This document shows, piece by piece, positions 1 to 61,600 of a stretch of 64,000 bases of DNA. The stretch lies in NCBI RefSeq assembly GCF_963676685.1, contig NC_092351.1, positions 55,986,001-56,050,000 of the forward strand. Direction: 5' to 3'. The stretch's first letter is position 1. The number at the start of each line of letters is the position of its first letter. A model generated the notes under the pieces. The model ran no database searches, was not told the DNA's origin, and was given only the letters and a program-made list of their open reading frames with translations. The stretch comes from Mytilus edulis (taxonomy: Eukaryota). The translations under genes were made by a program, and so were the position numbers.

Positions 1-537
1 AATAGGAAGGAAAGGGTATTTTTGGCTTAATGTAATAAACTAATTTTTCTGCTATAGTTAACATGGTTAATAATTTTGACACGAAGTTTTATAAACTTCG
101 GGCATGAAATGACGTTATCATGTTATTAAAAAACCCATTAAATTCCATGCTTTTACTTTGATTTTAATTGTTTTTTTTCTGCGTTTTAATATTTCGATGT
201 CAATTTTGTTTATACCGGTAACAGCCTTGTCTATATATCCTTGGATGAGGCAATGAGGACAGACAACAGACTCTTGGCATGCTTCCGGTAGGTATGCAAT
301 CAAGCCATTGCGTTTTGGAAATCTCGAATGTACTTGATTCATGCTGTGCTGACACCACTTCCTGATAGTTTCATAGATAGCGTTGTCTGCTCACATTATT
401 TATTGAAAATAATCTACCATAGCAATAAAACTCCTTAAATGTTATGTTATCGTGTACGATCAACTTATCCATGATGTCGATCATAGAATTCGAATACTTG
501 AATTTCAGTCTTTTTTTCATTTAAAATCAATACTTAC

Positions 538-607
538 AGGGTTTCCAATAACACACACTTAAACGTATCTGCTGAGATTATTGAAATTTGGTTACTGTAT
601 AGAATTT
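538..607 (-). pseudogene. Decayed LRR exon (paralog of 8332-8403)
   Basis: The GTAAGT donor is retained. There is a ~3-bp internal deletion, and the acceptor reads TTTCAA rather than TTTCAG. Confidence 0.65.
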
Positions 608-1094
608 TGAAAAAAAAGATTAGTACTCCATATCTACACTACACAAGAACTATATAATTTATATAATCAGTCTGATAAAATCTTATTCTACTATCATTAC
701 TACAGTAAATCAGTCCTTAAAACAATATTGGGATGAGATGCTTCTAACCAGATTAACAATGTATTCTAGGTAATAATACATCTGATACTACAAGATCTGC
801 CGCATGACCAATGTCAGTTTCCGGAATCATGAATCAAGTGACACTTTATTCAATTGTTGTTTGCCAATTGATCCCTTTTTAGGAATTTTTACATTTATCA
901 GGAATGCTAACAAAATATAGAAAGCCAAAGATTTAAAAATGCGTGTGAAGCTTTAAAACCAAAAGGGACGATCAATCAATTCCTGATATCGACCATAGAA
1001 TTGGAAAACTGGAACGTCCGTCTTTTTTTATTCTATTATAAAACACATTTTAACAAGGAATACAAGGAGACAACATCATGAAACGCAACTGGTG

Positions 1095-1630
1095 AAAAAT
1101 ATATTTGGTTTGTGGATCAAGATCTGAAAATGCCATATAGGTAAAATCATTGGGTTTGTGGATTAAGATATGTAAATAACATATAGAGAAATACATTTAG
1201 TTTGTGGATAAAGATCTGCAATTACCATGTACATAAAAACATTTAGTGTGTGAATTAAGATTTTAAAATACCATGTAGATAAAAGACATTTAGATTGTGG
1301 ATCAAGATCTGAAAATCCATGTCGATCGGACAATACCATATAGATAAAAACATTTGGTTTGTGGATCAAGATCTGAAAATACCATGTAGATAAAGACATT
1401 TAGATTGTGGAACAAGATCGGACAATACAATATAGATAAAAACATTGGGTTAGTGGATCAAGATCTGCAAATACCATGTAGATAAAGACATTTTGGTTTG
1501 TTGATCAAGATCGGAAAATACCGTGTAGATACAGATATTGGGTATCAAGATTTCAAAATATCATATACTAGATAAATACATTTGGTTTGTGGATCAATAT
1601 CTGAATATACCATGTAGATAAATATATTTG
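1095..1630. repeat. 46-bp minisatellite (~11-12 units)
   Basis: Unit approximately atttggtttgtggatcaagatctgaaaataccatgtagataaaaac. Confidence 0.92.
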
Positions 1631-1785
1631 TAAAAGAATAAACGAATCATCAGTAAAAGACGATTCACTTTTTTTGGACGTGACACGTGTTTTGATTTAA
1701 ACCAATCTGACATGGGGTCACATACAACCAAATCGTTCAATACAAAAGCAAGATTTACATGGTTTTCAATGAAACAAGTACTTAC

Positions 1786-1857
1786 ATGGTATTGATTGAA
1801 ACAAGACCATTAAACACATTTGCTGTTAAAGATGAAATTTTGTTGAATTCTAACTTT
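1786..1857 (-). CDS. 72-bp LRR exon (KLEFNKISSLTANVFNGLVSINT)
   Basis: TTTTCAG acceptor, GTAAGT donor. Paralog of 9713-9784. Confidence 0.8.
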
Positions 1858-1917
1858 CTGAAAAGAGTTAAAAATTACCATGATTAAGATTTGTCATTAA
1901 AACACTTTTCAAATTAC

Positions 1918-1990
1918 CCGCCTTAATAGAACAAAGTTAGTACTTGACGTATTGACTGTTGTAGCGGAAATTTGATTTCCAGTTAAACCT
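1918..1990 (-). pseudogene. Decayed LRR exon (GLTGNQISATTVNTSSTNFVLLRR)
   Basis: The LxxNQIS start is recognisable and a GTAATT donor is present. The expected acceptor reads TTTTCAA. Paralog at 9846-9918. Confidence 0.55.
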
Positions 1991-2387
1991 TGAAAATGAT
2001 AAAGATTTAATGAAATGTAAACACTATAAACATTTAGTGAACACGCCACTGGTATTTGATTTAAACAACTCTTTAATCTTTTACAAGAAACCAAAAATAG
2101 AGAAATTCATATGTTACTGAATACCAATTATGGAAGTGGAGCATTTTTGTTACGTAGCAGAAATATGAGACAAATGGTAAACATTACAGCGTCAAATGAC
2201 AAAAGAGGTCACGTGTGATTGTTAACAAATATTAAATGATATAGCCAAACACAAATGAAAATAACAATTTTTACATGTTATACGTCTGCAGCGTTTTTTT
2301 CTAGATATACTTCCGTCACGAACGATAAAAGCCAAATATTTGGAAGCCATAGATGGTTAAGTAACCATACGAATGAAAAGTTTGATA

Positions 2388-2695
2388 ACCAAAAGGGACC
2401 TAAAGAATCTATCCAAATCAATATAAAATCAACTTTGCATGAATGTGTTGGAATCTTTGTTTCAAATGATTAATACATAGACACACGAACATTTAAGGAA
2501 TGGTGTACATGCAAAAACAGTAGATAATGATACAAGCAAAACTGCATACATTGACCAAAACGGACCTAAACATTCTAACAAAATCAATTTAAAATCAACT
2601 TTTCCTGAATTTGTTGGAACCTTTGCTTCTAATGATTAATGCATTGATACATGGACAATTTAGGAATGGTTTACATGCAAAAATGGTTGATGATT
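2388..2695. repeat. Diverged two-copy tandem repeat, ~166-bp period
   Basis: accaaaagggacctaaa...tacatgcaaaaa recurs at ~2388 and ~2554. Confidence 0.75.
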
Positions 2696-2917
2696 GGTGT
2701 TTGCAAATTGAGGCACTTTTCTGTTTTTGTTTAAATTCGTAAGGAATTCAAGGAATTCGTAACAGTTGCTAAAGGTAGAAATCATAGGATGTATTCATGC
2801 TTGAAAGGAACTATGACCATTATCATGATTAGAGACTATCAACTCATTCATAATGTCGCACATTAAATTAGACAGCTTTAATTCTAGTAATTCATTTATT
2901 GAATAAACAGAACTTAC

Positions 2918-2989
2918 AATTGTTCCAACGATGTAAGATTAATAAACGCATCTGCTGCTATGGTTTTAATGCCGTTTCGGGATAGATCT
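2918..2989 (-). CDS. 72-bp LRR exon (DLSRNGIKTIAADAFINLTSLEQL)
   Basis: CTTTCTAG acceptor, GTAAGT donor, 72 nt. It lies in a ~860-bp block that is absent from the right-hand duplicate. Confidence 0.85.
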
Positions 2990-3459
2990 CTAGAAAGAGA
3001 TAAAGAATTAATGAATTGTCATTAAAATATTATTCAAATGCATCAAACGCGTTTATTAAATTAGCTGTTCAATATGTCCTGCACACTTATTCATCAGTAA
3101 GACTCAAGAGAATACAAAATGTAAAGTAAAAGTGTATCGATATGGAGAAACTGTGTAAGTGTCAAATATATGTACAACCTCAAATATATGTCCTTCTCTT
3201 AGGTCTATATCCGTGACGTCATGACACTCAAATCTGTGGATTTTTTTTATTCAAAGCAGTGTCCTTTTCATAAGGTGTACACTTTTAGTAATGTGACGTG
3301 ACTGGGGACATGCTCAAATAAACTATGTCGGGGTTTTATTAAGCGCCACCAGTGACTTTCTGGATTTATTGTTGATTTCTTTAGATAACAATTTGTACGA
3401 AATATGTTCCACTATACTAAAAGCAAGCATGAAAAAATGCTTGTTTCATCTTTAAAATA

Positions 3460-3995
3460 GAGGCGAAATATACCACTACACCTAAACTCATAAGTCGTAA
3501 ATATACTGAAAACGCCATGGCAAAAAAAAAAAAATAAGAAGACTAACAGACAAACAACAGTACACCAATCACAACAGAAAAAAATTAAAACTGAGCAACA
3601 AGAACCCAACCAAAAACTGGGGGTGATCTCATGTGCCCCGGCAGGTTTAAAACTGTTTTGCTGATAAACATGCTGAAAACTGTTTTGGGACGCGGAATTT
3701 TCCACTTGGTCATCCCTTCCCAATTAGCATTGCGGTTGCGCTCAGTCATTCGATTCATTTACCTTACTAGAAATAAAAGTTAGGCTACGCCAGTGTCAAT
3801 TCTACCCTTCCGGAGCACCTGATATCACCCCCAGATTTTGGTGGGGTTCGTGTGCTCAGTCTTTAGTTTTCTATGTTGTGTTTTGTATACTGTTGTTTGT
3901 CTGTTTGACTTTTTCTTTTTTAGCCATGGCAGTTATCAGTTTATTTTCGACTTATTAGTTTGAATGTCACTCTGGTATTGTTCGCCTCTCTTTTA
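3460..3995. mobile_element. Two oppositely oriented fragments of an abundant interspersed repeat family (paralog 10570-11105)
   Basis: The motif ttttggtggggttcgtgt..ctcagtctttagttttctatgttgtg..tagccatgg..tttgaatgtc recurs at 18575-18665, 40100-40345 and 55770-56000, and in reverse at 3460-3640, 41150-41300 and 47770-47910. Confidence 0.75.
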
Positions 3996-4186
3996 CAGCT
4001 TATCTAGAACTGTGACGTTACAACATAAAATTAGAACAACTTGAAGAAAAAAAACAAAGTTTGAAAGGGCATGAATCCTAAGAGCGACACTGAAATCACA
4101 AAAAAAAAAAAGAAAAATGACGAAAGACGAAAATTAACGATCAACATTATATTTCACTGTTTTGTCTTCAAGGCTTCTTTACCTAT

Positions 4187-4346
4187 NNNNNNNNNNNNNN
4201 NNNNNNNNNNNNNNNNNNNNNNNNNNNNNNNNNNNNNNNNNNNNNNNNNNNNNNNNNNNNNNNNNNNNNNNNNNNNNNNNNNNNNNNNNNNNNNNNNNNN
4301 NNNNNNNNNNNNNNNNNNNNNNNNNNNNNNNNNNNNNNNNNNNNNN
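4187..4346. other. N run (160 nt)
   Basis: Seen directly. Confidence 0.99.
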
Positions 4347-4390
4347 TATTAACTATTTCTAGATAAAATACAAAAGCGAACCACACTTAC

Positions 4391-4555
4391 AATAGTGTTG
4401 TAGTATTAGGTATACCATCAGGTATATCTTCTAAATTTCATGTTTTTTCATATCACTTCTGTGCCTTGGCAATCACAGGAAAATTCTGAACACGGATTGG
4501 CACAAGCTGTTTGCAATGAGCCAATTATTAGAATAATCGTTACGGTTAACATCAT
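4391..4555 (-). pseudogene. Disabled duplicate of the signal-peptide/LRRNT exon
   Basis: Homologous to 11501-11664 but 165 nt (+1 frameshift), with TGC>TGA at the fourth LRRNT Cys. Homology stops a few bases upstream of the ATG, so the 5' flank was not copied. Confidence 0.85.
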
Positions 4556-4678
4556 TATAACCACAAATAAAAGTAAAAGGTTTTGAACAAACGGAACGAT
4601 AAACAAATTTATGATGTTGACCAAATATTTTGAGAATGAAATTTAGGATAACCATTAGTAAAAAAAAATTTAACTTAC

Positions 4679-4750
4679 AGGTTTTTTAATGACACAAGAT
4701 CATTAAACGCATCTTTTGCTATAGTTGATATCTGGTTTCCTCGAAAATTG
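4679..4750 (-). CDS. 72-bp LRR exon (NFRGNQISTIAKDAFNDLVSLKNL)
   Basis: TATTTTCAG acceptor, GTAAGT donor, 72 nt, phase 2-2. Confidence 0.85.
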
Positions 4751-5551
4751 CTGAAAATAGATAAGGCATTAATGAATCGTCAGTAAAACACTATTTTGAA
4801 GCAAGGAGGTCGTTTTGTTTCTTTTTCCATTTTCAATAACAAGTGAATAATACTAAAAGTAACTGATGCAATATAATATTATACATCTAAAAGATTATCT
4901 ACATGATAAATATGTAAACAGTTGTGTAATTTGACCCAGTCTAAGAAAATTTCGGACCATGGCAGGGGATTGTTTTATTTACATTTTTTAACAACAAATC
5001 CAAGGGATCATATCATGGATATACTAATTAAACTATTACATTATAGCAAGGGACATTTTCTAAATATGGAATTATAGGGAGTGGGGGCAGTAAGAATTAA
5101 ACAGAATTCATAATAAAGCCTTATGAAACATGCATTTCCCTGCATGATAGCCTCCCTTAATTTGAGAGGAGATTCTAAAGGAGTAATAGACATAATATTT
5201 AAAGCATTACAGACGCAATGTCTTACACAAGTATGTTAGATATGTTTAAACATATTCATCATTCCTGTAGGTACCTTATTATAAAATTAGGTGTGTAAAA
5301 CACTGGGAATATGATAACCAAGATATTTGGTGCTAAGATTTGGAGGGAAAGATATTGTTGTTTTATTGCTACAGTTTGATAAAAGGTCAAGTCGTGTAAA
5401 CTAGATATAAAATATACACACTTGACAAAATGGAGAAAACAGCACTTCGATTCACTGAAGAACAAAAGGAAACTATTTACAGTTAATTGGATATTACAAT
5501 TGGGATGTAGATTTAGTAGATAGTAACAATGAGATAGCAAAGGTTACAACT

Positions 5552-5969
5552 ATGTCCACACAAACTAGTGACAATGTACAGGAGGAGATAGAAGATGGAA
5601 TTGAAGAAAACCAATTCCTCATAGAACGAGACCAAGCATGTGAGGAATGTCCCTTTTGTTTTTGCAAACCTTGCATTAATAGTGAAAAAAAACAGGCAAA
5701 TGTGGTGGGAAAGTGAACCTCAAAATAGACATCAAAGAAATAATAGAAAGGAGAAGTACAAATATTTCTGGACAATGATGTTTCACCGAGAAGCTTGGAA
5801 GAATGACAGATATTTAATGGGAAAACAAGCTGCTCTTGAAAGGGACCCTATATTCAAAAATGACACATGGCAAAAAAGAGATGTTATGCCTAAGTGTGTC
5901 CTAAAACTGGTAAGAGGGTGGCGTCCAAATCCTGAAAATATTACTTATATGGGCCACCTCTGGGAATAG
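5552..5969 (+). pseudogene. Intronless ~138-aa Cys-containing ORF with a P2X7 intracellular (ballast)-like C-terminus; one +1 frameshift in an A8 run
   Basis: MSTQTSDNVQEEIEDGIEENQFLIERDQACEECPFCFCKPCINSEK joins NRQMWWESE...KYKYFWTMM...RDVMPKCVLKLVRGWRPNPENITYMGHLWE* if one A is removed at 5685-5692. The R..MP.CV...VR...P.P....Y.G pattern resembles the end of the P2X7 ballast-type domain (recognised from memory, not searched). Confidence 0.6.
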
Positions 5970-6749
5970 TTACATAAATTTATAAAAGTGACATTTATTT
6001 AATAGGATATAACATTTTTTTAACATTAGTTGGCACAACAGATTAAAATACTATCTATATTCTGAAGCTTTGAAAGGATTATATAATTGATTGATCCCCT
6101 GCAATATGTAAGTAGATTCTCAATTCACAAATGCATGCTTTAGATTACTTAAAGCCACATGTGGTATGCTACTTTCGTTGTAAACATAAACAGACTGTTG
6201 TTGTCATGGTTATCTCCTCCTACTTGTCAATCACAGGAATTTGAATTTGAAAAATAGCTGTGCTTCAGGATTTTAATTTGTAATATCTTTATTGTGAGTT
6301 ATTCTATTTTCTCACTGTTTGGCCTAAACTGACCATAATTTATGTTCTGACAACTGTACAAGTTTAAAAGTAAAGCAGATAGCAATTTTTGTATTAATTT
6401 TGAAAAATGCTTCTCACTTCTTAACATTGCCCAATATGTGAATAAAATCATATTTTTATGAATTGTCTCCCTTTTATACCCTAGCCCCGGTGTTTAAATG
6501 TTATAAGTTAAGAGCGAAAATAACGATAATGATAAAAATAAAATAGTATATTCATTTGGTGTATGCATATTAAAACGCTTTTCTTGATAAATACATTCAT
6601 CTGGAATATAACAAATAGAAAGCCACCAACTTATTAAAGCTTGAAAAACTGCAGTACTATTCGCGGCGATCAACTTATTCATGATGTCGATCATAGAATT
6701 TGAATACGGGAATTTCAGTCTTTTTTTTAATTTTGAAATCAATACTTAC

Positions 6750-6821
6750 AGGGTTACCAATGACACAAGATCCTTAAACGTATCTGCTAAGATTATTGAA
6801 ATTTGATTATAGCTTAGATCC
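6750..6821 (-). CDS. 72-bp LRR exon (DLSYNQISIILADTFKDLVSLVTL)
   Basis: Canonical splice sites, 72 nt. Nearly identical to the 8181-8252 cassette, including the flanking intron. Confidence 0.88.
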
Positions 6822-7059
6822 CTGAAAATAGAGTATGTCACATATAAATAAATTGTCAGTAAAACATTATTCAAATTTATTGAGCACGACACGACGTCTT
6901 TTATTTTAACCTTTCAAATACGACTAAAAGTCACATTCACCAGGAACGCTCACGAAAAGTCCAAACTATTGACACTCAATGTGTGTCAATAGTCTTGACC
7001 AAGAGGGACGATAAACAAATCTATAATGTCGACTATAGAAATGGAGAATACAAATTTCA

Positions 7060-7465
7060 GTATTTCAATGACACAAGATCCTTAAACGTGTATGATGCTA
7101 TAATTGAAATTTTATTTCTATTTAATAGTCTAAAAAAGAGATTAATGAATCGTCAGTAAAATATTATTCAAATTTATTGAACACGACATGTTTTTTTTGC
7201 ATAAGCCTGGACGTCATATTCATCAGGAAGGCACCAAACAAAACAAAAATTGAAAGCTAAGGCCCATCGATAGTCGAAAAATATTTTGACCAAATGGGAT
7301 GATTAACAAATTGATGATCATGATGATGTCGACCAAAAAATTGGAGAGTTTTATTTAAGACAACCATAAGTAAACAATAACACTAACAAGATATTCAATG
7401 ACTCAAAAATTAATTCTTAAACTTATCTGTTGCTATAATTGAAATTTGGTTTCCTTGTGAAAGTT
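7060..7465 (-). pseudogene. Two decayed LRR exon cassettes (~7060-7130 and ~7387-7465)
   Basis: Both contain the exon-family core (caatgacacaagatccttaaacg / tgctataattgaaattt) and the shared intron flanks. They lack intact donors and/or carry indels. Confidence 0.6.
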
Positions 7466-8180
7466 TGAAACCAGATAAGGGAATGATGAATCGTAGGTAA
7501 AACAATGTTTAAATGTTTTGAATACGACATTTGTGTTCGTTGTTTGCCTTTCTATTCGGACTTGATGTAACTATCTATCAAAAAGTCATATAAATATTTT
7601 CAAATAACGTATGTCTTAAAAATATTTTGCAACACCTGATTTTTTAAAACGTTTTTAAAACTTTATACGAATATGAAGGAAAGGGTATTCTTGGCTTAAT
7701 GTAATAAACTATGTTTTCTGCTATTGTTAACAGTTTTGACACGAAGTTTTAGAACTTCGGGCATGAAATGACGTAATCATGTTATTAAAAAACCCATTAA
7801 ATTCCATGCTTTTGCTTTGATTTTAAGTGTTGTTTTTTTTTTCTGCGTTTTAATATGTCAATGTCAATGTTGTTTATACCGCTAACTGCATTGTCTATCC
7901 TTGGATGAGGCAATGAGGACAGACAACAGACTCTTGGCATGCTTCCGGTAGGTATGCAATCAAATCATTGCGTTTGGCATCTCGAATGTACTTGATTCAT
8001 GCTGTGCTGACACCACCTCCTGATAGTTTCCTAGATAGCGTTGTCTGCTCACATAAGTTATAGAAATAAAACTCCTTAAATGTTATGCAATCGTGTACGA
8101 TCAACTTATTCATGATGTCGATCATATAATTTGAATACGGGAATTTCAGTCTTTTATTTTATTTTGAAATCAATACTTAC

Positions 8181-8252
8181 AGGGTTACCAATGACACAAG
8201 ATCCTTAAACGTATCTGCTGAGATTATTGAAATTTGGTTACTGCTTAGATCC
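8181..8252 (-). CDS. 72-bp LRR exon (DLSSNQISIISADTFKDLVSLVTL)
   Basis: TATTTTCAG acceptor, GTAAGT donor, 72 nt, canonical xLSxNxIxxIxxxxFxxLxxLxxL pattern. Confidence 0.88.
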
Positions 8253-8331
8253 CTGAAAATAGAGTATGTAACATAAACAAAAATTGAATACTTGAATTTC
8301 GGTCTTGTTTTCATTTAAAATCAGTACTTAC

Positions 8332-8403
8332 AGGGTTTTCAATAACACATGATCCTTAAACGTATCTGCTGCGATTATTAAAATTTGGTTATCGCTTAGA
8401 ATC
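8332..8403 (-). CDS. 72-bp LRR exon (ILSDNQILIIAADTFKDHVLLKTL)
   Basis: TTTTCAG acceptor, GTAAGT donor, 72 nt, open in phase 2. Confidence 0.75.
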
Positions 8404-8892
8404 CTGAAAAACAGATTAGTACTCCATATCTACACTACACAAGAACTATATGATTTATATAATCAGTCTGATAAAATCTTATTCTACTATCATTACTACA
8501 GTAAACCAGTCCTTAAATAAATATTGGGATGAGATGCTTCTAATCTGATTGATCAATGCATTCTTGGTAATAATACATCTGATACTAAAAGATCTGCCGC
8601 ATGACCAATATCGGTTTCCGGAATCATGAATCAAGTGACACTTTATTCAATTGTTGTTTGCCAATTGCTCCCTTTTTAGGAATTTTTACATTTATCAGGA
8701 ATGCTAACAACATATAGAAGCCAAAGATTTATAAATGCTTGTGAAGCTTTAAAACCAAAAGGGACGATCAATCAATTCCTGATATCGACCATAGAATTGG
8801 AAAACTGGAACGTCCGTCTTTTTTTATTCTATTATAAAACAAATTTTAACAAGGAATACAAGGAGACAACAACATTAAACGCAACTGGTGAA

Positions 8893-9548
8893 AAATATAT
8901 TTGGTTTGTGGTTCAAGATCTGAAAATGCCATGTAGGTAAAATCATTGAGTTTGTGGATTCAGATATGTAAATAACATATAGAGAATTACATTTAGTTTG
9001 TGGATCAAGATCTGAAAATACCATGTACATAAAAACATTTAGTTTGTGAATTAAGATCTCAAAATACCATGTAGATAAAGACATTTAGATTGTGGATCAA
9101 GATCGGATCGGACAATACCATATAGATAAAAACATTTGGTTTGTGTATCAAGATCTGAAAATCCCTGTCGATAAATACATTTGGTTTGTGGATCAAGATC
9201 TGAAAATGCCATGTCGATAAATACATTAAGTTTGTGGATCAAGATCTGAAAATACGATGTAGATAAAAACATTTAGTTTGTGGATCAAGATCTGAAAATA
9301 CCATGTAGATAAAGGCATTTAGATTGTGGATCAAGATCGGAAAATACCATATAGATAAAGACATTGGGTTAGTGGATCAAGATCTGCAAATACCATGTAG
9401 ATAAAGACATTTGGTTTGTTGATCAAGATCGGAAAATACCGTGTAGATACAGATATTGGGTATCAAGATTTCAAAATATCATATACTAGATAAATACATT
9501 TGGTTTGTGGATCAGTATCTGAATATACCATGTAAATAAATATATTTG
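8893..9548. repeat. 46-bp minisatellite (~14 units), paralog of 1095-1630
   Basis: Same unit; period 46 (e.g. 9271 to 9317). Confidence 0.92.
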
Positions 9549-9712
9549 TAAAAGAATAAACATGATAAATGAATCATCCGTAAAAGATGATTCACTTTTT
9601 TTGGACGTGACACCTGTTTTGATTTAAACCAATCTGACATGGGGTCACATACAACCAAGACGTTCAATACAAAAGCAAGATTTACATGGTTTTTAATGAA
9701 ACAAGTACTTAC

Positions 9713-9784
9713 ATGGTTTTCAATGAAACAAGACCATTAAACACATTTGCTGTTAAGGATGAAATTTGGTGGAATCCTAAATTT
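9713..9784 (-). CDS. 72-bp LRR exon (NLGFHQISSLTANVFNGLVSLKT)
   Basis: TTTTCAG acceptor, GTAAGT donor, exactly 72 nt, phase 2-2. Fits the typical 24-aa LRR consensus except for N>H at the conserved Asn. Confidence 0.8.
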
Positions 9785-9845
9785 CTGAAAAGAGTTAAAG
9801 AATTACCATGATTAAGATTTGTCATTAAAACACTATTCAAATTAC

Positions 9846-9918
9846 CCGCGCTAATAGAACAAAGGTAGTACTTGACGTATTGACTGTTGTAGCCGAAATT
9901 TGATTTCGAGTTAAACTT
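9846..9918 (-). pseudogene. Decayed LRR exon
   Basis: Homologous to 1918-1990, with the same damaged acceptor. Confidence 0.55.
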
Positions 9919-11296
9919 TGAAAATGATAAAGATTGAATGAAATGTAACACTATTATAATTTATTGAACACGCCACTGGTCTTTGATTTAAACTTTTCCA
10001 ATATTATCAGGCTTGAAATCAACATATATGGAGCATAACACAACTCTTTAAGCTTTTACAAGAAACCAAAAATAGAGAAATGCATATGTTGCTGAATACC
10101 AATTATGGAAGTGAAGCATTTTTTTTACGTAGCAGAAATATGAGACAAATGGTAAACATAACAGTGTCAAATGACAAAAGAGGTCACGTGTGATTGTTAA
10201 CAAATATTAAATGATATAGCTAAACACAAGTGAAAATAACAATGTTTACATGTTATACGTCTGCAGCGTTTTTTTCTAGATTTACTTCCGTCACGAACGA
10301 TAAAAGCCAAATATTTTAGGTGTATATCCGTGACGTCATGACACTCAAATCTGTGGATTTTTGTTGATTCAAAGCAGTGTCCTTTTCATAAGGTGTACAC
10401 TTTCAGTAATGTGACGTGACTGGTGACATGCTCAAATAAACTATGTCGGGGTTTATTAAGCGACAGCAGTGACTTTCTGGATTTATTGTTGATTTCTTTA
10501 GATAAAAATATGTACGAAATATGTTCCACTATACGAAAAGCAAGCATGAAAAATGCTTGTTTTATCTTTAAAATAGGGGCGAAATATACCACTACACTTA
10601 AACTCATAAGTCGTAAATATACTGAAAACGCCATGGCAAAAAAAAATAAGAAGACTAACAGACAAACAACAGTACACCAATCACAACAGAAAAAAATTAA
10701 AACTGAACAACAAGAACCCAACCAAAAACTGGGGGTGATCTCATGTGCCCCGGCAGGTTTAAAACTGTTTTGCTGATAAACATGCTGAAAACTGTTTTGG
10801 GACGCGGAATTTGCCACTTGGTCATCCCTTCCCAATTAGCATTGCGGTTGCGCTCAGTCATTCGATTCATTTACCTTACTAGAAATAAAAGTTAGGCTAC
10901 GCCAGTGTCAATTCTACCCTTCCGGAGCATCTGATATCACCCCCAGATTTTGGTGGGGTTCGTGTGCTCAGTCTTTAGTTTTCTATGTTGTGTTTTGTAT
11001 ACTGGTGTTTGTTTGTTTGACTTTTTCTTATTTAGCCATGGCAGTTATCAGTTTATTTTCGACTTATTAGTTTGAATGTCACTCTGGTATTGTTCGCCTC
11101 TCTTTTACAGCTTATCTAGAACTGTGATGTACAACATAAAATTAGAACAAATTGAAGAAAAAAAACAAAGTTTGAAAGGGCATGAATCATAAGAGCGACA
11201 CTGAAATCACAAAACAAAAAAGAAGAATGACGAAAGACGAAAATTAACGATCAACATTATATTTCACTGTTTTGTCTTCAAGGTTTCTTTACTTAT

Positions 11297-11454
11297 NNNN
11301 NNNNNNNNNNNNNNNNNNNNNNNNNNNNNNNNNNNNNNNNNNNNNNNNNNNNNNNNNNNNNNNNNNNNNNNNNNNNNNNNNNNNNNNNNNNNNNNNNNNN
11401 NNNNNNNNNNNNNNNNNNNNNNNNNNNNNNNNNNNNNNNNNNNNNNNNNNNNNN
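11297..11454. other. N run (158 nt) at the paralogous position to 4187-4346
   Basis: Seen directly; flanks on both sides match those of the first run. Confidence 0.99.
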
Positions 11455-11500
11455 ACTATTAACTATTTCTAGATAAAATACAAAAGCGAACCACACTTAC

Positions 11501-11664
11501 AATAGTGTTGTAGTATTAGGTATACCATCAGGTACATCTTCTAAATCTCGTGATTTGCATATCACTTCTGTGCCTTGGCAATCACAGGAAAAGTCTGAAC
11601 ACGGATTGGCACAAGCTGTTTGCAATGAGCCAATTATTAGAATAATCGTTACGGTTAACATCAT
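11501..11664 (-). CDS. First coding exon of an extracellular LRR protein (signal peptide + LRRNT cap)
   Basis: ATG at 11664. Translates MMLTVTIILIIGSLQTACANPCSDFSCDCQGTEVICKSRDLEDVPDGIPNTTTL: hydrophobic leader, then a C-x4-C-x-C-x6-C..L..VP..IP..T..L LRRNT pattern. Ends in phase 2 at a GTAAGT donor (plus-strand acttac 11495-11500). Confidence 0.9.
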
Positions 11665-11992
11665 TCTAAAACTCGTCTCTTTTGTCCTTTTAAAAATAAA
11701 CAATAAAAGAATCAAATGAAATAAATGCAAAACGTGAACTTCCTGCAGCCATATCTGTAAATATTCACAAAACTATCGGCTTCCTTGTTAAACATAGTCA
11801 TCTTTGACATAGATAGATAAGTATATAAGAAATTTACAGCAACCAAACCTTTCTTTAATATCAAAAGTTAGTTATACATAAAAACACTGGTCTATCATCA
11901 CTATTTTTATCATTTTTTTGTCCATACGTACCAGTTTAAAATCATAAAATTTCCCTTCGACTATTTATGTTTTGAAAACAATTTTATAAATG

Positions 11993-12680
11993 TAAGAAGA
12001 TGTGGTATGATTGCCAATGAGACAACTCTCCACCAGAGGCCAAATGACATAGAAGTTAAAAAAATGAGTTACTCTACGCCCTACAAGAATAAGCAAATCA
12101 AATGCCTTATAGTAAGATATAGAAGGGCTTGAACTGTAAATGTATTTTTGTATTGTTTTCAATAACGATATCGCTATTTTTCAATGCATTTTGTTCTTTA
12201 TCACAGATTAACAGTCAATGTATCATTTATCACCAGAATAACTTTTTCTCTGAAGTACAAAAATGTTATAACAGTCCAAACATTCTTCAAAAGAAAGTTA
12301 AATATAAAACAAATAAAAAGGTTCTGTATGATTTCCAATGACACAACCCTCGTCAGTGACCAAATGAAAAAGGTTAAGAATGATAAGCCGTCTTATGACA
12401 TTCAACAATGTTCAAAACCCATACGCATAGTAAGCTATTATGAATCAAGAAATGTCGAATGTTGAATGTAAAACAAATCAAAAGAGAAAACTAGTGTCCT
12501 GATTTATGTACAAAACCATTAACAAAAACCAATATGATACACATCAACAAAAGACAACAACTGAATGACAGGCTTCTGACTTGGCATAGGGAAATACAGA
12601 ATATTGCGGGTTGGACTTGTTTGCTGGTAAAACAAAAACTCCTCCTATCCTGGGACCGTGTAACAGTACAGCATAAGAGC
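11993..12680. mobile_element. Copies of an abundant non-autonomous interspersed repeat (aagatgtggtatgattgccaatgagacaactctcc... family)
   Basis: The same family occurs at 13200-13420, 29085-29335, 39740-39960 and 61150-61360, and in reverse at 20665-20985, 32095-32297, 36805-36862, 56940-57535 and 63840-64000. Confidence 0.8.
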
Positions 12681-13924
12681 ACATACATTGCCAACTGAAA
12701 ACAACAACTACTGCTGTTAAATTTACTACAGCATCATTTTATGTTTCGGATCTATTAGACGCAGTAAATTTTTTTATTTAAATTGGCGTGATTAATGGCA
12801 GAAGGTCATACCAGTACTCGAATACCAGTTCCAATTATACTGGTTCTTTTGTATATGATAGTCTATCTCTGGGATTAAGACATTTCTATCATTTCTTATG
12901 TTTGCCAATTGAAAAAATACCTAGAAAACAAAAGTAAATGACGAACTGTAATCAAGGGCATTACAAATGATAGGAATTATTTAACTGTTTGATAAATATT
13001 AAATGTTATGTTAATCTAGAATTGATTTCTCGGCAAGTGTAATGTTAAGACTTAACGCCTGACTTCCTATTTAGGCATTTCATTTCTGGGTTATGAATTT
13101 CTAATAATTCGGGAAATTTAAATGCTCTCTCGACAATAAATGACACAACAGAACGATGATATGGCAGAAATTGTATACTTTTCTTAATTGTGAGTATATA
13201 AATATAATGAGATGTTGTATGATTACTAATGAGTCAACTATCAACCAAAGTCGAAGTGAAGAAGATGTAATCAGTTACAGGCAACCAGACGGACTTCAAC
13301 AAAGAAAAAAAGTCAATACTTTATAGTCGGAAATAAAAGGCAGCGAAATGAAAAATATGAAACAATTCAATATTGAAAACTAAAGGCTTCATTTTGAACA
13401 AAACAATTCATAAAGATCATATATAATTGTTCAGTGAGGGATTATCTTTTGTTTATTTACAGTCCAAATCTATAAGTTATACTGAGTTTAGCTATATTTT
13501 ATGCCACACTGCCAAAACCAATGCCCCTCCTTACTTCACATACAGTACGTGCAACCTTATGCGCTACTGCTTGACGTAAACTTGACTGATCGGTGAACGA
13601 TCGGTGACGGATGTTTGACTGATCGATTAATATCGGTGATCGATGACCCATAGAATCCGTCAGATACGTCAAATAAGCTATATGAGAGTTACCGTGATAA
13701 TGGTCAGCGATCGATCAGTAAATTAAGTTTATCCACGGATCGGACGAATACGTATATAATTAATTCTTATGTAAAACGAACTCCACAGTTTTTACGGTCG
13801 ATAAATGCGGACCTCTAATAAGACATCTTTACTCATTAAATATGTACCACTAAAGTTATTATTTGTGATAGGCCTCAAAAAAGTTTTTTGGTAGAAGTTA
13901 AAAAAATGAAAGGATTAAAATACT

Positions 13925-16180
13925 TAAGCTTTAGTTTGTGTTAAATAAAAATGCAATAATTTCATTATTTTGAAAGTTAATTTCAGTATTTTGTACACCG
14001 GGATTAGTTGTTTTTCATAAAATATTCTGAATTTCAGGGAAAAGATACTAAATTTTTGTTCGTGTTGCGTAAAAATGCAAATATTTCTTCTTTCGAAACA
14101 GAAATAATGCAACATCAGTCATAACTAGTGCATTCAGATAAGTAATTTTGTATAATATATGAATTATTGAAGGATAAATATGCATAAACTTTTTTTTGTT
14201 AAATAAGAATTCAATTATTTCTTTATTTTAATGGAAATTACTGACCACCTGTGGTTTTTTGTACTTTTTATGGTTCAGTACTGGTTACTTTTTTATAAAA
14301 TAAAAATCATATCTAAAAAAAATTACTAAAATGAGGTTTGCATTGTTTAAAATTACCAATTTTACAATAATGTAACTAGTCATTATAAAGTCCTCGAATA
14401 AGGTTTGTTTTGTAAGAATTTTGATAATGGAAGGGGAACATTACTTAAACTTTTGTTTTGTACTGAATAGTAATGCAATAATTTCTTTATTTTGATAGAA
14501 AATATGAACCGTCATTTCATTTTAGTACCTTTAGTACATCTGAAATGGTTGTTTTTCATAACATATGTTAAATGTCAGGAAAACGATACTAAATTTTTGT
14601 TCGCGTTGCTTAAAAATGCAAGTATTTCTTCTTTTATATCATAAATAATGCAACGTCAACTGCAATCAGTCATTAACAATGCATTTTGATCAGTACGTTT
14701 GTTTAAAAAGAGAATAATTGAAGGACAAATATGCATAAACATTTGTTTTCATAGAAACGAATGCACTGGTTTCTTTATTTTCATTGAAATTATTTTGGTA
14801 CTTTTTTTTAGTTTAGGATTGATTGATTTCCATAAAAGTTAAAAAAAAATATCAGAGAATACATACTTAAATATTGTTCGAATTATTTAAAATTACCAAT
14901 TTTCTTCTTTTGATAACCAATAATGCAACATTATTTGTAACTAGCTATTTCAGTTTTCCAATAAGATTTTTTTTTGTAAGAATTTTGATAATGTAAGCAG
15001 TAATTACTCAAACTTTTGTTTTGTGTTGGTAAACAAACTTTAATATACGAATGCAAAAATTTCCTTATGTTGATAGAAATTATGAACCGTTATTTGATTT
15101 CGATTCTTTTTGTTCATCAGGATTGGTTGTTTTTCATAAAATATGCTGAATTTGAGGAAAAGATACTGAATTTTTGTTCGTTTGCTTAAAAATGAAAAAA
15201 ATCTTCTTTTTTTATCAGAATTAATACATCTTTTGCAATCATTTATAATTAATGCTTTTAGAGAAGTAATTTTGTATTAAATAATAATAATTGGAGGATA
15301 AATTGCATAAACTATATTTTTGTTAGATAAGAATGCAATAATTTCTTTATTATGATAGAATGTATGAACCGTCATTTGATTTCGGTTCTTTTTGTACATC
15401 AGGTTTGGTTGCTTTTTCAATAATAATGACATAAAATATGTTGAATTTGAGGGAAACAATACTAAACCTTTGGTCACATTGCTTAAAAATGCATAAATTC
15501 TTCTTTTATATCAGAAATAATGCAACATCTATTGCAATCATTTATAATTAATGCTTTTAGATAAGTAATTGTGTATTAAAAGTGAATAATTGAAGGATAA
15601 ATATGCATAAACTTTGTTTTTGTTAGATAAGAATGCAATTATTTCTTCACTTTAATTGAAATTATTGATCGCCATTGGAATTTTGTACCTTTTATAGTTT
15701 AGGATTAATTGTTTTTCTTAAACGTTAAAGAATATCAGAAAAAATATACTTAAATGTTGATCGCATTGTTTAAAATTACCAATGTTTCTTCTTTTGACGA
15801 AAAATGATGCTATTTTTAACTAGTTATTTCAAAGGCCTCAAGATAAGATTTTCTCTATAAGAACTCGAAATTATTTGATTTTGTTTTAAATAGAATGCAT
15901 CATTACTTTAATTGAGGGGAACTTTTTGGCGGCCATTTGATTTTTTAACATCATAATGGGTTGTTTACCACAAAATTAAATAAATATCAGAGGAAAGATA
16001 CAACAAGTCATTCGCAATGTTTTAACATTACCAAATAACAAATATTTCTTCTTTTGATATAAAATGTAACAACCTTTTTTGTGATTTGTTATTTCAGTAA
16101 AGGCACCAGATAAGTTTATTAAAAAGTTTAAGATAATAAGTATAACAAACTGAAAATATTGAAAATAAGACACCAAAATT
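13925..16180. repeat. Degenerate AT-rich tandem array with ~290-bp subunit and ~540-580-bp higher-order period
   Basis: The anchor atactaaatttttgttcg (or a variant) occurs at 14045, 14586, 15163 and 15459. Confidence 0.8.
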
Positions 16181-42460: not shown

Positions 42461-43279
42461 ATGCATAGATACAAAAACGGTCCTCGTAGGCCACGATACA
42501 GTTCCTCAGACACTGATAGTGAATTATATCGTCCACCACCTAAACGAGTGAACACACAATCGTACACTGCTCCTGTTGATATTTCTTTAAAACCAGTCAT
42601 GTCTGACCCGTCGAAAGATAACACAATCTCCACAAATGATTTATATCAACTAATGCTGACCATTAAAGAAAACCAAGACTCTCTCAGAACTTCATTAAAA
42701 CATAGAATAACAAACTTGGAGTCTAAGTTTACACAAGAGATACAACGACATGTAAAATCTCTGAAAGATGAAATGACATTAGAATTTGCACATGTTGACA
42801 ATAAAATAAAGGAACTACAATCAAAGATGTCAAAATATGAATCAGGTCATAATACAGACAGTTTACAATCGGTTACAAACGAGAACAACTCACAACATAA
42901 ACTGGTATTTAAAAACATGAAACTCGAAAACAACGATCAAGAGAGCCGTAAGGCATACGTTAACGGTATCGTACATTCTATTGGATTATATTTTAATGTA
43001 ATTGATGTTCAACAGATCGGTCAAAATAACGGTACAGCCAATACGGGCAATCAAATTAGAACGAAACCCGTTATTGTGTCATTCCAAGAGGGAAAACATT
43101 GCGTTGATGTGCTAAAGAATAAAAGAAAACTGAAAGGTATTGATGATCTTAAAAACATATATATAGAAACGGATCGTTCTCGTCAAGAAAGATCGCAAGA
43201 GGCAAACTTTCGACGCTTAGCAAAATCTATTCCAAATCTACAATTTAAAAACGTACGGGTTATTAAAAAACAAAATTAA
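42461..43279 (+). CDS. LINE ORF1 protein (coiled coil + RRM-like region), 272 aa
   Basis: Open ATG-initiated ORF directly upstream of ORF2. Heptad-rich middle, and a PVIVSF..KRKLK..IYIETD pattern typical of LINE ORF1p. Confidence 0.8.
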   Translation: MHRYKNGPRRPRYSSSDTDSELYRPPPKRVNTQSYTAPVDISLKPVMSDPSKDNTISTNDLYQLMLTIKENQDSLRTSLKHRITNLESKFTQEIQRHVKSLKDEMTLEFAHVDNKIKELQSKMSKYESGHNTDSLQSVTNENNSQHKLVFKNMKLENNDQESRKAYVNGIVHSIGLYFNVIDVQQIGQNNGTANTGNQIRTKPVIVSFQEGKHCVDVLKNKRKLKGIDDLKNIYIETDRSRQERSQEANFRRLAKSIPNLQFKNVRVIKKQN

Positions 43280-43309
43280 CAGCAACGCTAGTCAAATAGA
43301 GAAGATACA

Positions 43310-46300: not shown

Positions 46301-46825
46301 AACAATATCAAGACAGTTTTGAATACTTGTAATCTTACGCATTTGATCAACTACAGTGGCGAGAATATTTCTACAAACTACGTTTTAGAAACAGCCAAAA
46401 GTAAATGTGTAGATGACTTCAAAGATAGATGGGGTAACGAATTGCGAACAATGCCAAAACTGAGAACGTATAAAACTTTTAAGTCCGAATTCTCAACGGA
46501 ACCATATGTAAAAAGACATTTATCAAGGGTGCAACGTTCTGGAACTTTTCCACTAGAAATTGAGCAAGGTCGTTACAGAAACATTCCACCTAATCTACGT
46601 ATATGTAAATTGTGTAATTCAGGTTCGATTGAAGATGAAACACATTTCCTCATCTATTATGACCGTTATACTGAATCACGAAACAGACTGTTACGGGAGT
46701 TACCTTCTATTCACATTGATGAGCTACCTCCAAACGAAGCCATTACAGTACTCTTAAATGCTAATACCAAACTTGTAGCAAACTTTATTTTAGAATTTTC
46801 CAATATAAGACGTGAATTTATATAA
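43310..46825 (+). pseudogene. LINE ORF2 (AP endonuclease + reverse transcriptase), frameshifted in the endonuclease
   Basis: IGSWNCNG, DIVGICESHL, GGVGFLI, CGDFNGRIG, SVVDY and PDH are spread over different frames (shifts near 43350 and 43700). The open 984-codon stretch carries QNGFR, FVDFSKAFDSV, GVRQGDNLAP, YADD (45653) and YLG, then KLRTYKTFK and CKLC...EDETHF. Confidence 0.9.
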
Positions 46826-61467: not shown

Positions 61468-61600
61468 CTTATAAATCAATTCTAGCCGTAGAATTTATAA
61501 ATCAATTTTAGCCGTAGAATTTATAAATTAATTCTGGCCGTAAAATTTATAAATCAATTCTAGCCGTAGAATTTGAAATCAATTCTAACCGTAGAACTGT
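61468..61600. repeat. 26-bp tandem repeat (~5 units), ttataaatcaattctagccgtagaat
   Basis: Seen directly; it grades into the right subterminal array. Confidence 0.9.

What the first reader, a model, noticed from the sequence alone, without database searches (positions are those of the whole stretch)
538..11664. LRR gene built from interchangeable 72-bp exon cassettes with live and dead copies interleaved
Seen: after one signal-peptide/LRRNT exon there are at least 7 intact 72-nt phase 2-2 exons and about 5 decayed ones. The intron flanks are also homologous between cassettes (e.g. atgatgtcga(c/t)catagaatt on one side and taatgaatcgtcagtaaaa on the other), so the unit of duplication is exon plus intron. 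The cassettes differ strongly in the first residues (DLSSN, ILSDN, DLSYN, NFRGN, DLSRN, KLEFN, NLGFH), while the scaffold QIS.I..D.F.DL.SL is largely kept. Established: these positions form the concave ligand-binding face of LRR solenoids, and symmetric exons can be skipped or shuffled without a frameshift. Inference: this is a birth-and-death cassette system that could diversify a bivalve recognition receptor by recombination and/or alternative splicing. The C-terminus lies outside the window, so the receptor class is unknown.
Basis: partly seen in the sequence, partly recalled or inferred. Interest (0 to 1): 0.8.

Follow-up and report, generated by a model that had tools for sequence, protein, structure and literature searches.

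The report
Mussel LRR gene of duplicated exon cassettes
This is the front part of a mussel gene for a secreted leucine-rich-repeat protein in which every repeat is its own small exon, copies of these exons have been gained and lost, and the residues lining the likely binding surface change unusually fast.

Summary
On the minus strand there are exactly 7 intact 72-nt AG..GT exons in one phase and 7 decayed relatives. About 60-70 nt of intron on each side of the exons is also homologous.

The gene is not a receptor. To the left of the window it ends in an LRRCT exon, one TSP1 exon and a short tail. It belongs to a small Mytilus family of secreted LRR-TSP1 proteins.

The interleaving of live and dead cassettes has two causes:
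- Old pseudo-exons are shared with a paralog 20 Mb away.
- A 7.1-kb intragenic tandem duplication, running from the signal-peptide exon to LRR exon 7, was followed by complementary losses.

RNA contigs show splicing across the duplication junction and skipping of one intact-looking cassette.

The five concave-face codons differ at 26 of 105 nt, against 4.8% in non-coding DNA; pN is 0.30 and pS 0.045. This points to diversifying selection.

Nothing points to somatic or programmed diversification. One-LRR-per-72-nt phase-2 exon shuffling is already described in brown algae, and phase-2 LRR exons in hormone-receptor genes. I file this as a new member of a known kind.

The parts
11501..11664 (-). 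Signal peptide + LRRNT exon of unit B (coding part, ATG at 11664). It is intact and ends with 2 spare nt (TT), the same phase as the cassettes.
   Evidence: Pfam LRRNT 22.2 bits, below the 25.8 cutoff; best public relative P0001, 74% identity; an RNA contig carries the B-type letters
11297..11454 (.). Assembly gap inside the intron after the signal-peptide exon of unit B.
   Evidence: flanks collinear with the paralog
9871..9942 (-). Old pseudo-exon psi_a (unit B), about 70 nt and out of phase. Also present in unit A and in the paralog.
   Evidence: (E 0.067)
9713..9784 (-). Cassette E3B (NLGFHQISSLTANVFNGLVSLKT). Intact and used in RNA. The conserved Asn is replaced by His.
8893..9548 (.). 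46-bp minisatellite (14.2 copies) sitting inside a dead cassette.
8789..8927 (-). Dead cassette psi_m (unit B): 3' half of an exon plus downstream flank, donor site lost.
8332..8403 (-). Cassette E4B (ILSDNQILIIAADTFKDHVLLKT). Splice sites and frame are intact, but it was skipped in the one RNA contig that spans it. A core Leu is replaced by His.
8181..8252 (-). Cassette E6x (DLSSN...). An extra copy of the 6821-type cassette, 94% identical, absent from unit A and from the paralog. Used in RNA.
7395..7466 (-). Old pseudo-exon psi_b, with stops and no AG. Shared with the paralog.
7060..7131 (-). Cassette E5, dead here: the frame is open but the donor site is deleted. It is a working exon in the paralog.
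6750..6821 (-). Cassette E6B (DLSYN...). Intact and spliced to E7B in RNA.
4679..4750 (-). Cassette E7B (NFRGN...). Intact, the last exon of unit B, spliced in RNA to E2A across the duplication junction.
4391..4555 (-). Dead copy of the signal-peptide/LRRNT exon (unit A). It has a 1-nt insertion and a TGA, and it lacks its own upstream acceptor because the duplication boundary lies about 5 nt upstream of the ATG.
4187..4346 (.). Assembly gap at the same homologous place in unit A.
2918..2989 (-). Cassette E2A (DLSRN...). Intact. Its counterpart in unit B was removed by a deletion of about 860 bp at 10316.
   Evidence: (loose ends before 4679)
1945..2016 (-). Pseudo-exon psi_a (unit A).
1786..1857 (-). 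Cassette E3A (KLEFN...). Intact. One RNA contig carries exactly its three diagnostic letters.
993..1131 (-). Dead cassette psi_m (unit A), next to the minisatellite at 1103-1630.
538..606 (-). Cassette E4A, 69 nt like the paralog's E4. The frame is open and the donor kept, but the acceptor AG is changed to AA.

Best explanation
The stretch is the 5' two thirds of one expressed gene on the minus strand. The genome is inferred to be Mytilus edulis. The gene encodes a secreted protein: signal peptide, LRRNT cap, a run of 24-residue LRRs, LRRCT cap, one thrombospondin type-1 repeat and a short tail.

Each LRR is one 72-nt exon. The exon starts with the third base of a codon and ends with two bases (CT, AT or TT). 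Any cassette can therefore follow any other, and the junction residue stays hydrophobic.

The ancestral order is kept in a paralog 20 Mb away: SP, E2, psi_a, E3, minisatellite, E4, psi_b, E5, E6, E7, E8, E9, LRRCT, TSP1, tail.

At this locus a 7.1-kb piece from just upstream of the ATG to just past E7 was duplicated in tandem. Afterwards:
- The upstream unit kept the signal-peptide exon, lost E2 and E5, and gained a second E6-type cassette.
- The downstream unit lost the signal-peptide exon, the E4 acceptor, and psi_b, E5 and E6.

Shown: transcripts run through both units and skip the dead exons.

Inferred: cassettes are gained and lost in the germline by unequal recombination or slippage between the conserved intron flanks. 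Inferred: the concave-face codons are under diversifying selection, because the protein binds a changing ligand. Inferred: exon skipping and/or haplotype differences add variation in cassette number.
For: - Cassettes and phase.
- Flank homology.
- Tandem duplication: B 4561-11669 against A -2344..4560, with 2.5-4.3% mismatches in the clean pieces.
- Paralog: all 12 exon matches of P0015 are found at G000:C8:76.54 Mb, and the two loci are collinear.
- C-terminal exons: LRRCT-like ORF; TSP_1 at E 2.7e-13; tail ASCKHSKAQTRNQ.
- Family: P0001, P0014-P0019 and P0022, all Mytilus, all LRR plus TSP_1.
- RNA contigs:
  - joint 8251/8252 to 9712/9713 with canonical ends, which skips the 8403 exon;
  - joint 4750 to 6750;
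  - loose ends before 4679 that read the start of the 2989 exon, in X19 and X20;
  - a signal-peptide exon with B-type letters and a spliced 5' UTR.
- Selection, over 7 exon pairs against the paralog:
  - concave codons 26/105 nt against other exon nt 23/396 and non-coding 984/20409;
  - pN 0.301 against pS 0.045;
  - 35 of 100000 random 5-codon sets reach the observed value.
- A against B exons: 24/213 differences against 122/3311 in non-coding DNA.
- AlphaFold model of P0015: a strand every 24 residues, at last codon / junction / first codon.
Against: - All RNA evidence is from assembled contigs of three runs whose RNA label is a guess. One of them, X18, also holds intronic contigs and contigs of the paralog that cross-map.
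- No contig covers the whole transcript.
- E3B has His at the conserved Asn and E4B has His at a core Leu. This hints at decay in the upstream unit.
- No protein model for this locus was among the 120 listed of 772 hits.
- The selection test rests on two paralogs and 49 exon differences. Several differences are clustered: 6 sit in the first 10 nt of E7. They could be few multi-base events or short conversions rather than independent substitutions.
- Function and ligand are unknown.
Confidence: 0.72

Rival explanations
1. The locus is a rearranged, decaying duplicate of the working gene at 76.54 Mb. It is still transcribed, but its product is not functional. The fast change of the cassettes is loss of constraint plus a few conversion events.
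For: - Dead signal-peptide copy, dead E5, dead E4A acceptor, and deletions of E2 in unit B and of psi_b-E6 in unit A.
- His at the conserved Asn of E3B and at a core Leu of E4B.
- Non-concave exon positions change about as fast as non-coding DNA: 23/396 against 984/20409, p 0.34.
- No protein model of this locus among the listed hits.
Against: - Loss of constraint cannot lift replacement change five-fold above the non-coding rate, and only at the five a-priori concave codons (26/105 against 4.8%).
- All 10 cassettes that keep splice sites, plus the LRRCT and TSP1 exons, keep open frames.
- TSP1 differs at only 4/168 nt.
- Spliced contigs use exactly the intact exons and skip the dead ones.
Confidence: 0.2
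2. The tandem duplication is an assembly artefact: two haplotypes or two paralogs stitched head to tail around the gaps.
For: - Two N runs sit at the same homologous place in both units.
- No sequencing run held more than 0.58 of the sampled words.
- One RNA contig (X18) joins the B-type signal-peptide exon through 72 unknown letters to an A-type E3, as a single-unit gene would.
Against: - RNA contigs of X19 and X20 join E7B to the start of E2A, an order that exists only if unit B lies upstream of unit A.
- The units differ by 2.5-4.3% plus large complementary deletions, much as the locus differs from its paralog 20 Mb away.
- The DNA run X1 has depth in all 30 bins of 4347-10300.
- The junction at 4556-4561 is not at a gap.
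Confidence: 0.05
3. A programmed or somatic system, like lamprey VLR or chicken Ig gene conversion, copies cassettes into an expressed site to make many receptors per animal.
For: - Interchangeable in-phase cassettes with conserved flanks.
- Several different junctions onto the 4750-type cassette within one run, X20.
Against: - Every live cassette has its own splice sites and lies in one transcribed gene.
- All 13 matches in the window are on one strand and within 9.4 kb.
- Genome-wide there are only 15 cassette-like DNA matches, at about five loci.
- The junction variants are explained by exon skipping, alleles or the paralog.
- No rearranged DNA joint was seen in the DNA run X1, apart from one 77-nt skip.
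Confidence: 0.02

Closest known systems
Ectocarpus and other brown-algal ROCO genes with 'type I LRR exons' (Zambounis et al. 2012, PMC3341825; Teng et al. 2024, PMC11378527; passages read)
   Same: - Each LRR is one 72-nt exon in phase 2.
- Intact and inactivated LRR exons are interspersed in the introns.
- Exon duplication and shuffling occur.
- Positive selection acts at a few variable LRR positions.
- Several splice variants differ in LRR content.
   Different: - Unrelated protein: cytoplasmic LRR-ROC-COR GTPases there, a secreted LRRNT-LRR-LRRCT-TSP1 protein here.
- The algal genes also carry LRR exons on the non-coding strand. None was found here.
- The algal families are large (37 loci). 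Here there are about five loci.
Glycoprotein-hormone receptor and LGR genes (LH receptor exon structure as quoted in PMC11378527; LGR4 ectodomain structures such as 4li2)
   Same: - Typical 24-residue extracellular LRRs with an LRRNT cap.
- Similar-sized LRR exons, all introns in phase 2.
- P0015 matches the LGR4 ectodomain at E 3e-46, and RefSeq names the paralog 'LGR4-like'.
   Different: - There is no hinge and no 7TM domain. The LRRs are followed by LRRCT, TSP1 and a stop.
- The hormone receptors are conserved single-copy genes, not fast-evolving tandemly rearranged ones (recalled).
[quoted passage not shown] 2019, PMC6564038; passages read)
   Same: - Arrays of equal-length LRR exons separated by phase-2 introns, with a 'junction' residue coded by two exons.
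- Expansion by unequal crossing-over.
   Different: - 90-bp exons, thousands of genes, a ciliate.
- Here the exons are 72 nt and the family is small.
Lamprey variable lymphocyte receptors (VLR-A structure 2o6q among the PDB matches, E 2.9e-28)
   Same: LRRNT, variable 24-residue LRR modules and LRRCT, with diversity on the concave face.
   Different: VLRs are assembled somatically from hundreds of flanking cassettes without splice sites (recalled). Here the cassettes are ordinary exons and there is no donor reservoir.

Membership tests
Extracellular 'typical' LRR proteins with cysteine caps | Tandem 24-residue LxxLxLxxNxI repeats | tested here: met
   - 10 intact cassettes with this scaffold.
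- The paralog's protein P0015 hits LRR_8 at E 5.9e-57.
- The AlphaFold model has one strand per 24 residues, with pLDDT >85 over residues 30-230.
Extracellular 'typical' LRR proteins with cysteine caps | LRRNT and LRRCT cysteine caps | tested here: inconclusive
   - LRRNT scored 22.2 bits, below Pfam's cutoff of 25.8.
- The cysteine pattern is visible.
- The LRRCT-like exon (CC...W...C...C) matched no Pfam family, but it is conserved in all 8 family proteins.
TSP1-repeat proteins | Thrombospondin type-1 repeat (WxxW, CSxTCG) | tested here: met
   The exon at L003:3790-3957 (window -6210..-6043) hits PF00090 at E 2.7e-13 and 50.3 bits, above the cutoff of 21.6.
LGR (leucine-rich repeat-containing G-protein coupled receptors; RefSeq name of the paralog) | Rhodopsin-type 7TM domain after the LRR ectodomain | tested here: not met
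   - P0015 (368 aa) has no 7tm family among its 11 Pfam hits.
- At the locus the TSP1 exon is followed by a 38-nt tail exon.
- No hydrophobic stretch is present in the tail.
LRR exon-shuffling genes of the Ectocarpus ROCO kind (working likeness, not homology) | One LRR per 72-nt exon, phase-2 introns, inactivated LRR exons in introns | tested here: met
LRR exon-shuffling genes of the Ectocarpus ROCO kind | ROC-COR GTPase domains; LRR exons also on the non-coding strand | tested here: not met
   - The Pfam hits of P0015 are LRR families, TSP_1 and two chance matches without matched stretches; none is ROC or COR.
- All 19 profile matches in 54 kb and all 13 in the window are on the coding strand.
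VLR-like somatic cassette assembly | Incomplete germline gene flanked by many donor cassettes lacking splice sites | tested here: not met
   - 15 cassette-like DNA matches in the whole genome.
- The live cassettes have AG/GT sites.
- Only genomic and RNA contigs were seen, so somatic DNA could not be tested directly.
Small leucine-rich proteoglycans (names 'chondroadherin-like' and 'podocan' given to relatives) | Class-specific N-terminal cysteine cluster and C-terminal ear repeat | not tested
   Podocan-named proteins appear only as 27-32% identical hits over about half of the query. No feature test was made.

The most novel reading that the evidence does not exclude
Mussels carry a small, so far undescribed family of secreted LRR-TSP1 recognition proteins. 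In this family the binding surface is diversified in three ways at once. First, there is strong positive selection on the strand codons that straddle each exon junction. Second, whole exon cassettes are gained and lost in the germline, so that individuals differ in cassette number and order. Third, in-frame exon skipping occurs. Together these would give animal-specific repertoires, an animal counterpart of the brown-algal LRR shuffling genes.
Probability: 0.25. Interest if true: 0.7.

Novelty: new member of a known kind. Interest (0 to 1): 0.5.

Why it matters
Bivalves lack antibodies and rely on expanded, fast-changing innate recognition genes. Mussels are also known for large gene-content differences between individuals. 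Here the raw material of that variation can be seen at single-exon scale. There is a secreted LRR protein whose repeats are free-standing in-phase exons. There is a dated series of cassette gains and losses. And there is a five-fold excess of change at the predicted ligand-contact codons.

If the cassette content differs among animals, or changes with splicing, the family would be a tractable case of exon-level diversification of a recognition molecule in an animal. If not, it remains a clean textbook example of LRR growth by exon and segment duplication. It also corrects misleading automatic names such as 'LGR4-like' and 'chondroadherin-like'.

Tried and rejected
- My first motif scan for cassettes found nothing, because the LxxLxL motif is split between exons. 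I replaced it with a phase-aware scan.
- GPCR, TIR or TM continuation: rejected after reading 40 kb to the left.
- An exon hidden in the N gaps: judged unlikely. Each gap lies in a stretch of about 160-190 nt that is collinear with the ungapped paralog, whose gene model has no exon there. The letters were not looked up.
- The X18 joints 4739>8181 and 4747>6750, with extra letters between, at first looked like alternative cassette orders. I reject them as contigs of the paralog laid on this locus. Their loose end reads the paralog's E8 start, and the order matches P0015.
- The dN/dS rows for E4 were out of register, because E4A and the paralog's E4 are 69 nt. They were redone with a 3-nt gap, and the totals are not used.
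- Literature. Four searches found no paper on a Mytilus LRR-TSP1 family. The terms 'LRR-TSP1' and 'LRR and TSP1' had 0 occurrences in the listed papers. Gene lists in the supplements of mussel genome and immune-repertoire papers could name this family.
- The byssus paper PMC12607631 (passages read) mentions podocan and COMP only, not this family.
- No fold search was run on the model, because the TSP1 part had low confidence.

Full report
WHAT IS THERE

The gene lies on the minus strand. A mechanical scan for AG|72 nt|GT with an open frame at offset 1 returned 15 windows in window 1-14000. Seven of them carry the LRR scaffold xLxxNxIsxIxxDxFxxLxSLxx:
- 9784-9713
- 8403-8332
- 8252-8181
- 6821-6750
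- 4750-4679
- 2989-2918
- 1857-1786

Each exon starts with the third base of a codon and ends with two bases. Those two bases are CT in 6 of the 10 cassettes of the gene, AT in 3 and TT in 1. The junction residue is therefore Leu, Ile, Met or Phe whichever cassette follows. The signal-peptide exon ends in the same phase, with TT.

A DNA profile of cassette plus 60-nt flanks found 13 matches at E<=0.01 in the whole 64-kb window. All are on the minus strand and all lie within 481-9844. Six of the 13 are decayed copies. A seventh decayed copy scored only E 0.067.

The alignment of 17 units shows that about 60-70 nt of intron on each side is homologous too.

The decayed copies fail in different ways:
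- stops and no AG (7466-7395);
- donor deleted (7131-7060);
- out-of-phase length (9942-9871 and 2016-1945);
- donor lost next to a minisatellite (8927-8789 and 1131-993);
- acceptor AG changed to AA, with frame and donor kept (606-538, a 69-nt exon).

THE GAPS

Both N runs lie in the intron about 45 nt after the donor of each signal-peptide exon, and at the same homologous place in both units. The paralog, which has no gap, aligns collinearly on both sides: paralog 2565 with window 11485, and paralog 2725 with window 11296 and 4186. The sides are therefore in order and at about the expected distance, and no exon frame crosses a gap. I did not read or fill the missing letters.

THE REST OF THE GENE

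The window is G000:C8:55986001-56050000. I fetched 40 kb to its left. The gene goes on as follows, in window-relative coordinates:
- three more 72-nt cassettes at -2154, -2467 and -4688;
- an LRRCT-like exon (-5031..-5187);
- one thrombospondin type-1 exon (-6043..-6216; Pfam TSP_1 at E 2.7e-13);
- a 38-nt tail exon coding ASCKHSKAQTRNQ.

There is no membrane span and no TIR or 7TM domain.

THE FAMILY

I searched exon by exon and joined no exons into a spliced model.

The signal-peptide exon alone (54 aa) found 13 proteins at E<=0.001 among 1.84 billion. The best is P0001 from Mytilus coruscus (74% identity, 365 aa). It has a signal peptide, LRRNT, 8 LRR cassettes, LRRCT, TSP1 and a short tail.

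With P0001 as query, 772 proteins passed E<=1e-10 and 120 were listed. Those with both LRR and TSP_1 families are all from Mytilus: P0001, P0014-P0019 and P0022.

Their automatic names are misleading: 'LGR4-like', 'chondroadherin-like', 'carboxypeptidase N subunit 2-like' and 'HMCN'. These names reflect LRR similarity only. P0015 has LRR_8 (E 5.9e-57) and TSP_1 and no 7TM. Its best solved relatives are ordinary extracellular LRR domains: IGFALS, LRRC15, LRRTM, the LGR4 ectodomain, TLR3 and VLR.

P0015 sits on a contig of 90,587,198 bases. This is the length of C8 of this genome, so the genome is very probably M. edulis (an inference).

Relatives show the same cassette dynamics:
- P0001 has two identical consecutive cassettes.
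- P0016 has a 48-residue double cassette twice.
- P0017 lacks two cassettes of P0015.

THE PARALOG AND THE HISTORY OF THE LOCUS

All 12 exon matches of P0015 lie at G000:C8:76,538,389-76,551,063. Its order is SP, E2, psi_a, E3, minisatellite, E4 (69 nt), psi_b, E5, E6, E7, E8, E9, LRRCT, TSP1, tail.

The two pseudo-exons and the minisatellite are shared with our locus, so they are old.

Our locus is collinear with the paralog, at 4.1-6.6% mismatches in long pieces. The exception is that window 4561-11669 (unit B) and -2344..4560 (unit A) are tandem copies of the stretch from about 5 nt upstream of the ATG to about 120 nt past E7. The clean pieces of the two units differ by 2.5-4.3%.

- Unit B keeps the signal-peptide exon. 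It lacks about 860 bp with E2. It has a dead E5. It has an extra cassette at 8252 that is 94% identical to E6 at 6821.
- Unit A has a frameshifted signal-peptide exon without its acceptor, and a dead E4 acceptor. It lacks about 950 bp with psi_b, E5 and E6.

So the 'live and dead copies interleaved' are partly ancient pseudo-exons. The rest is the complementary decay of one segmental duplication, plus at least one single-cassette gain.

TRANSCRIPTS

No run is on record as RNA. Three runs guessed to be RNA held 5-6% of the words. I laid them with one DNA run on 4347-10300. All are contigs, so depth and ends mean little.

X20 gives three pieces of evidence:
- A joint 8251>9712 with canonical ends. 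Record 26 has 0 and 1 other letters on its two sides. This is E3B spliced to E6x, skipping the intact-looking 8403 exon.
- A joint 4750>6750, which is E6B to E7B.
- A loose end before 4679 that reads the start of the 2989 exon.

X19 shows the same loose end with one change. E7B joined to E2A is possible only if unit B lies upstream of unit A on one transcript, so the duplication is real and the dead signal-peptide copy is skipped.

X18 holds a 693-nt contig. It carries a spliced 5' UTR and the signal-peptide exon with exactly the B-type letters at the six places where A and B differ. Comparing the two E3 exons shows that these 3 letters, and the 9 unaligned bases, are what the A-type E3 would give. 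This contig therefore runs SP(B) - one 72-nt exon (probably E2A) - E3A. It is either a transcript that skips all unit-B cassettes or a haplotype without the duplication.

Further joints:
- 4749>9713 in X20, with one changed base. This is E3B joined directly to a 4750-type cassette.
- 'Goes back 72' at 4750/4679 in X19 and X20. These are two 4750-type cassettes in a row, an order not in the assembly.

Alleles with other cassette content, exon skipping or back-splicing could each explain these, and contigs cannot tell them apart.

Two X18 joints with extra letters are contigs of the paralog laid on this locus. X18 also has intronic contigs, so it holds pre-mRNA or DNA.

SELECTION

I fixed the concave-face positions beforehand from the LRR motif L1 x2 x3 L4 x5 L6 x7 x8 N9. 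They are exon codons 22, 23, 1, 3 and 4.

Over 7 exon pairs between the locus and the paralog:
- these 15 nt per exon differ at 26 of 105;
- the other exon bases differ at 23 of 396;
- long pieces dominated by non-coding DNA differ at 984 of 20409;
- Fisher p is 5e-12 for concave against non-coding, and 0.34 for other exon bases against non-coding.

By Nei-Gojobori counting:
- the concave codons have pN 0.301 (25/83) and pS 0.045 (1/22);
- the other 18 codons have pN 0.057 and pS 0.074;
- only 35 of 100000 random sets of 5 codons hold as many replacements.

The immediate 120-nt intron flanks differ at 60 of 1425.

Between units A and B the E3, E4 and E7 exons differ at 24 of 213, against 122 of 3311 in non-coding pieces. 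For E7 the exon differs at 6 of 72 while its flanks differ at 1 of 239 (p 0.0007).

The TSP1 exon differs at 4 of 168, LRRCT at 9 of 153 and the signal-peptide exon at 15 of 161.

The AlphaFold model of P0015 (8-sequence alignment; pLDDT >85 over residues 30-230; low in the TSP1 part) puts a short strand every 24 residues at last codon / junction / first codon. So the exon borders cut the ligand-facing strand, and the fast codons flank them.

Caveats:
- There are only two gene copies and few events.
- Some differences are clustered and may be single multi-base changes.
- The direction of change is not polarised, although the M. californianus protein P0014 suggests that both copies changed.

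WHAT IT IS NOT

Cassette-like DNA occurs only 15 times in the genome: at this locus, at the paralog, and at C8:82.11 Mb, C4:90.75 Mb and C8:46.85-47.10 Mb. No cassette lies on the other strand. The DNA run shows no rearranged joint apart from one 77-nt skip. This does not fit a VLR-like or gene-conversion donor system.

COMPARISON WITH WHAT IS KNOWN

One LRR per 72-nt phase-2 exon has been described for brown-algal ROCO genes. So have inactivated LRR exons inside introns, positive selection at a few LRR positions, and splice variants with different LRR sets (PMC3341825 and PMC11378527; passages read).

PMC11378527 also quotes the phase-2, equal-sized LRR exons of gonadotropin receptor genes. 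Tetrahymena has arrays of 90-bp phase-2 LRR exons (PMC6564038; passages read).

The principle is therefore known. New here are the protein architecture (secreted LRR-TSP1), the animal host, and a well-resolved history of one locus. My four literature searches found no description of this Mytilus family. Supplementary files could not be read.

VERDICT

- The finding is a new member of a known kind.
- Interest is moderate. It rises if single-animal long reads show that cassette content really varies.

Noticed in passing
window 8893-9548 and 1103-1630: A 46-bp minisatellite (14.2 copies in unit B) lies inside a dead cassette. The cassette's upstream flank is at 9593-9564 and its 3' half at 8927-8789. 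The array is also present at the same place in the paralog (L007 about 5196-5800).
   Followed up: partly
window 4679-4750 (joints): RNA contigs of two runs (X19, X20) show a 4750-type cassette directly followed by a second 4750-type cassette ('goes back 72'). This order is not in the assembly. It could be a cassette copy-number allele or a back-splice.
   Followed up: partly
window 3450-3645 / 3806-3998 and 10566-10757 / 10918-11110: An inverted repeat of about 195 nt per arm (77-79% identity) sits in the first intron of both units. Related copies are at about 18581, 40216, 41158, 47767 and 55838. It looks like a MITE-type element.
   Followed up: no
window 5400-5970 (+), duplicated at window -2344..-240: An ORF-bearing insertion lies in the intron between E6B and E7B and is part of the duplicated unit. 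Low-depth contigs of X20 cover 5083-6040.
   Followed up: no
window 42461-46825 (+) and 22728-24292 (+): A LINE-like retrotransposon: a 272-aa ORF, then an endonuclease-like piece and a 984-aa reverse-transcriptase-like ORF. A second, broken copy lies further left. This was judged by eye from the translations.
   Followed up: no
window 59435-61012: A 260-bp satellite with 6.1 copies at 94% identity, flanked by 25-26-bp repeats at 58322-58469 and 61469-61747.
   Followed up: no
G000:C8:46.85-47.10 Mb, C8:82.11 Mb, C4:90.74-90.75 Mb: Further family loci. There are three TSP1/LRRCT matches in a C8 cluster. On C4 there is a run of seven TSP1 matches about 700 nt apart, next to a cassette-like match.
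   Followed up: no
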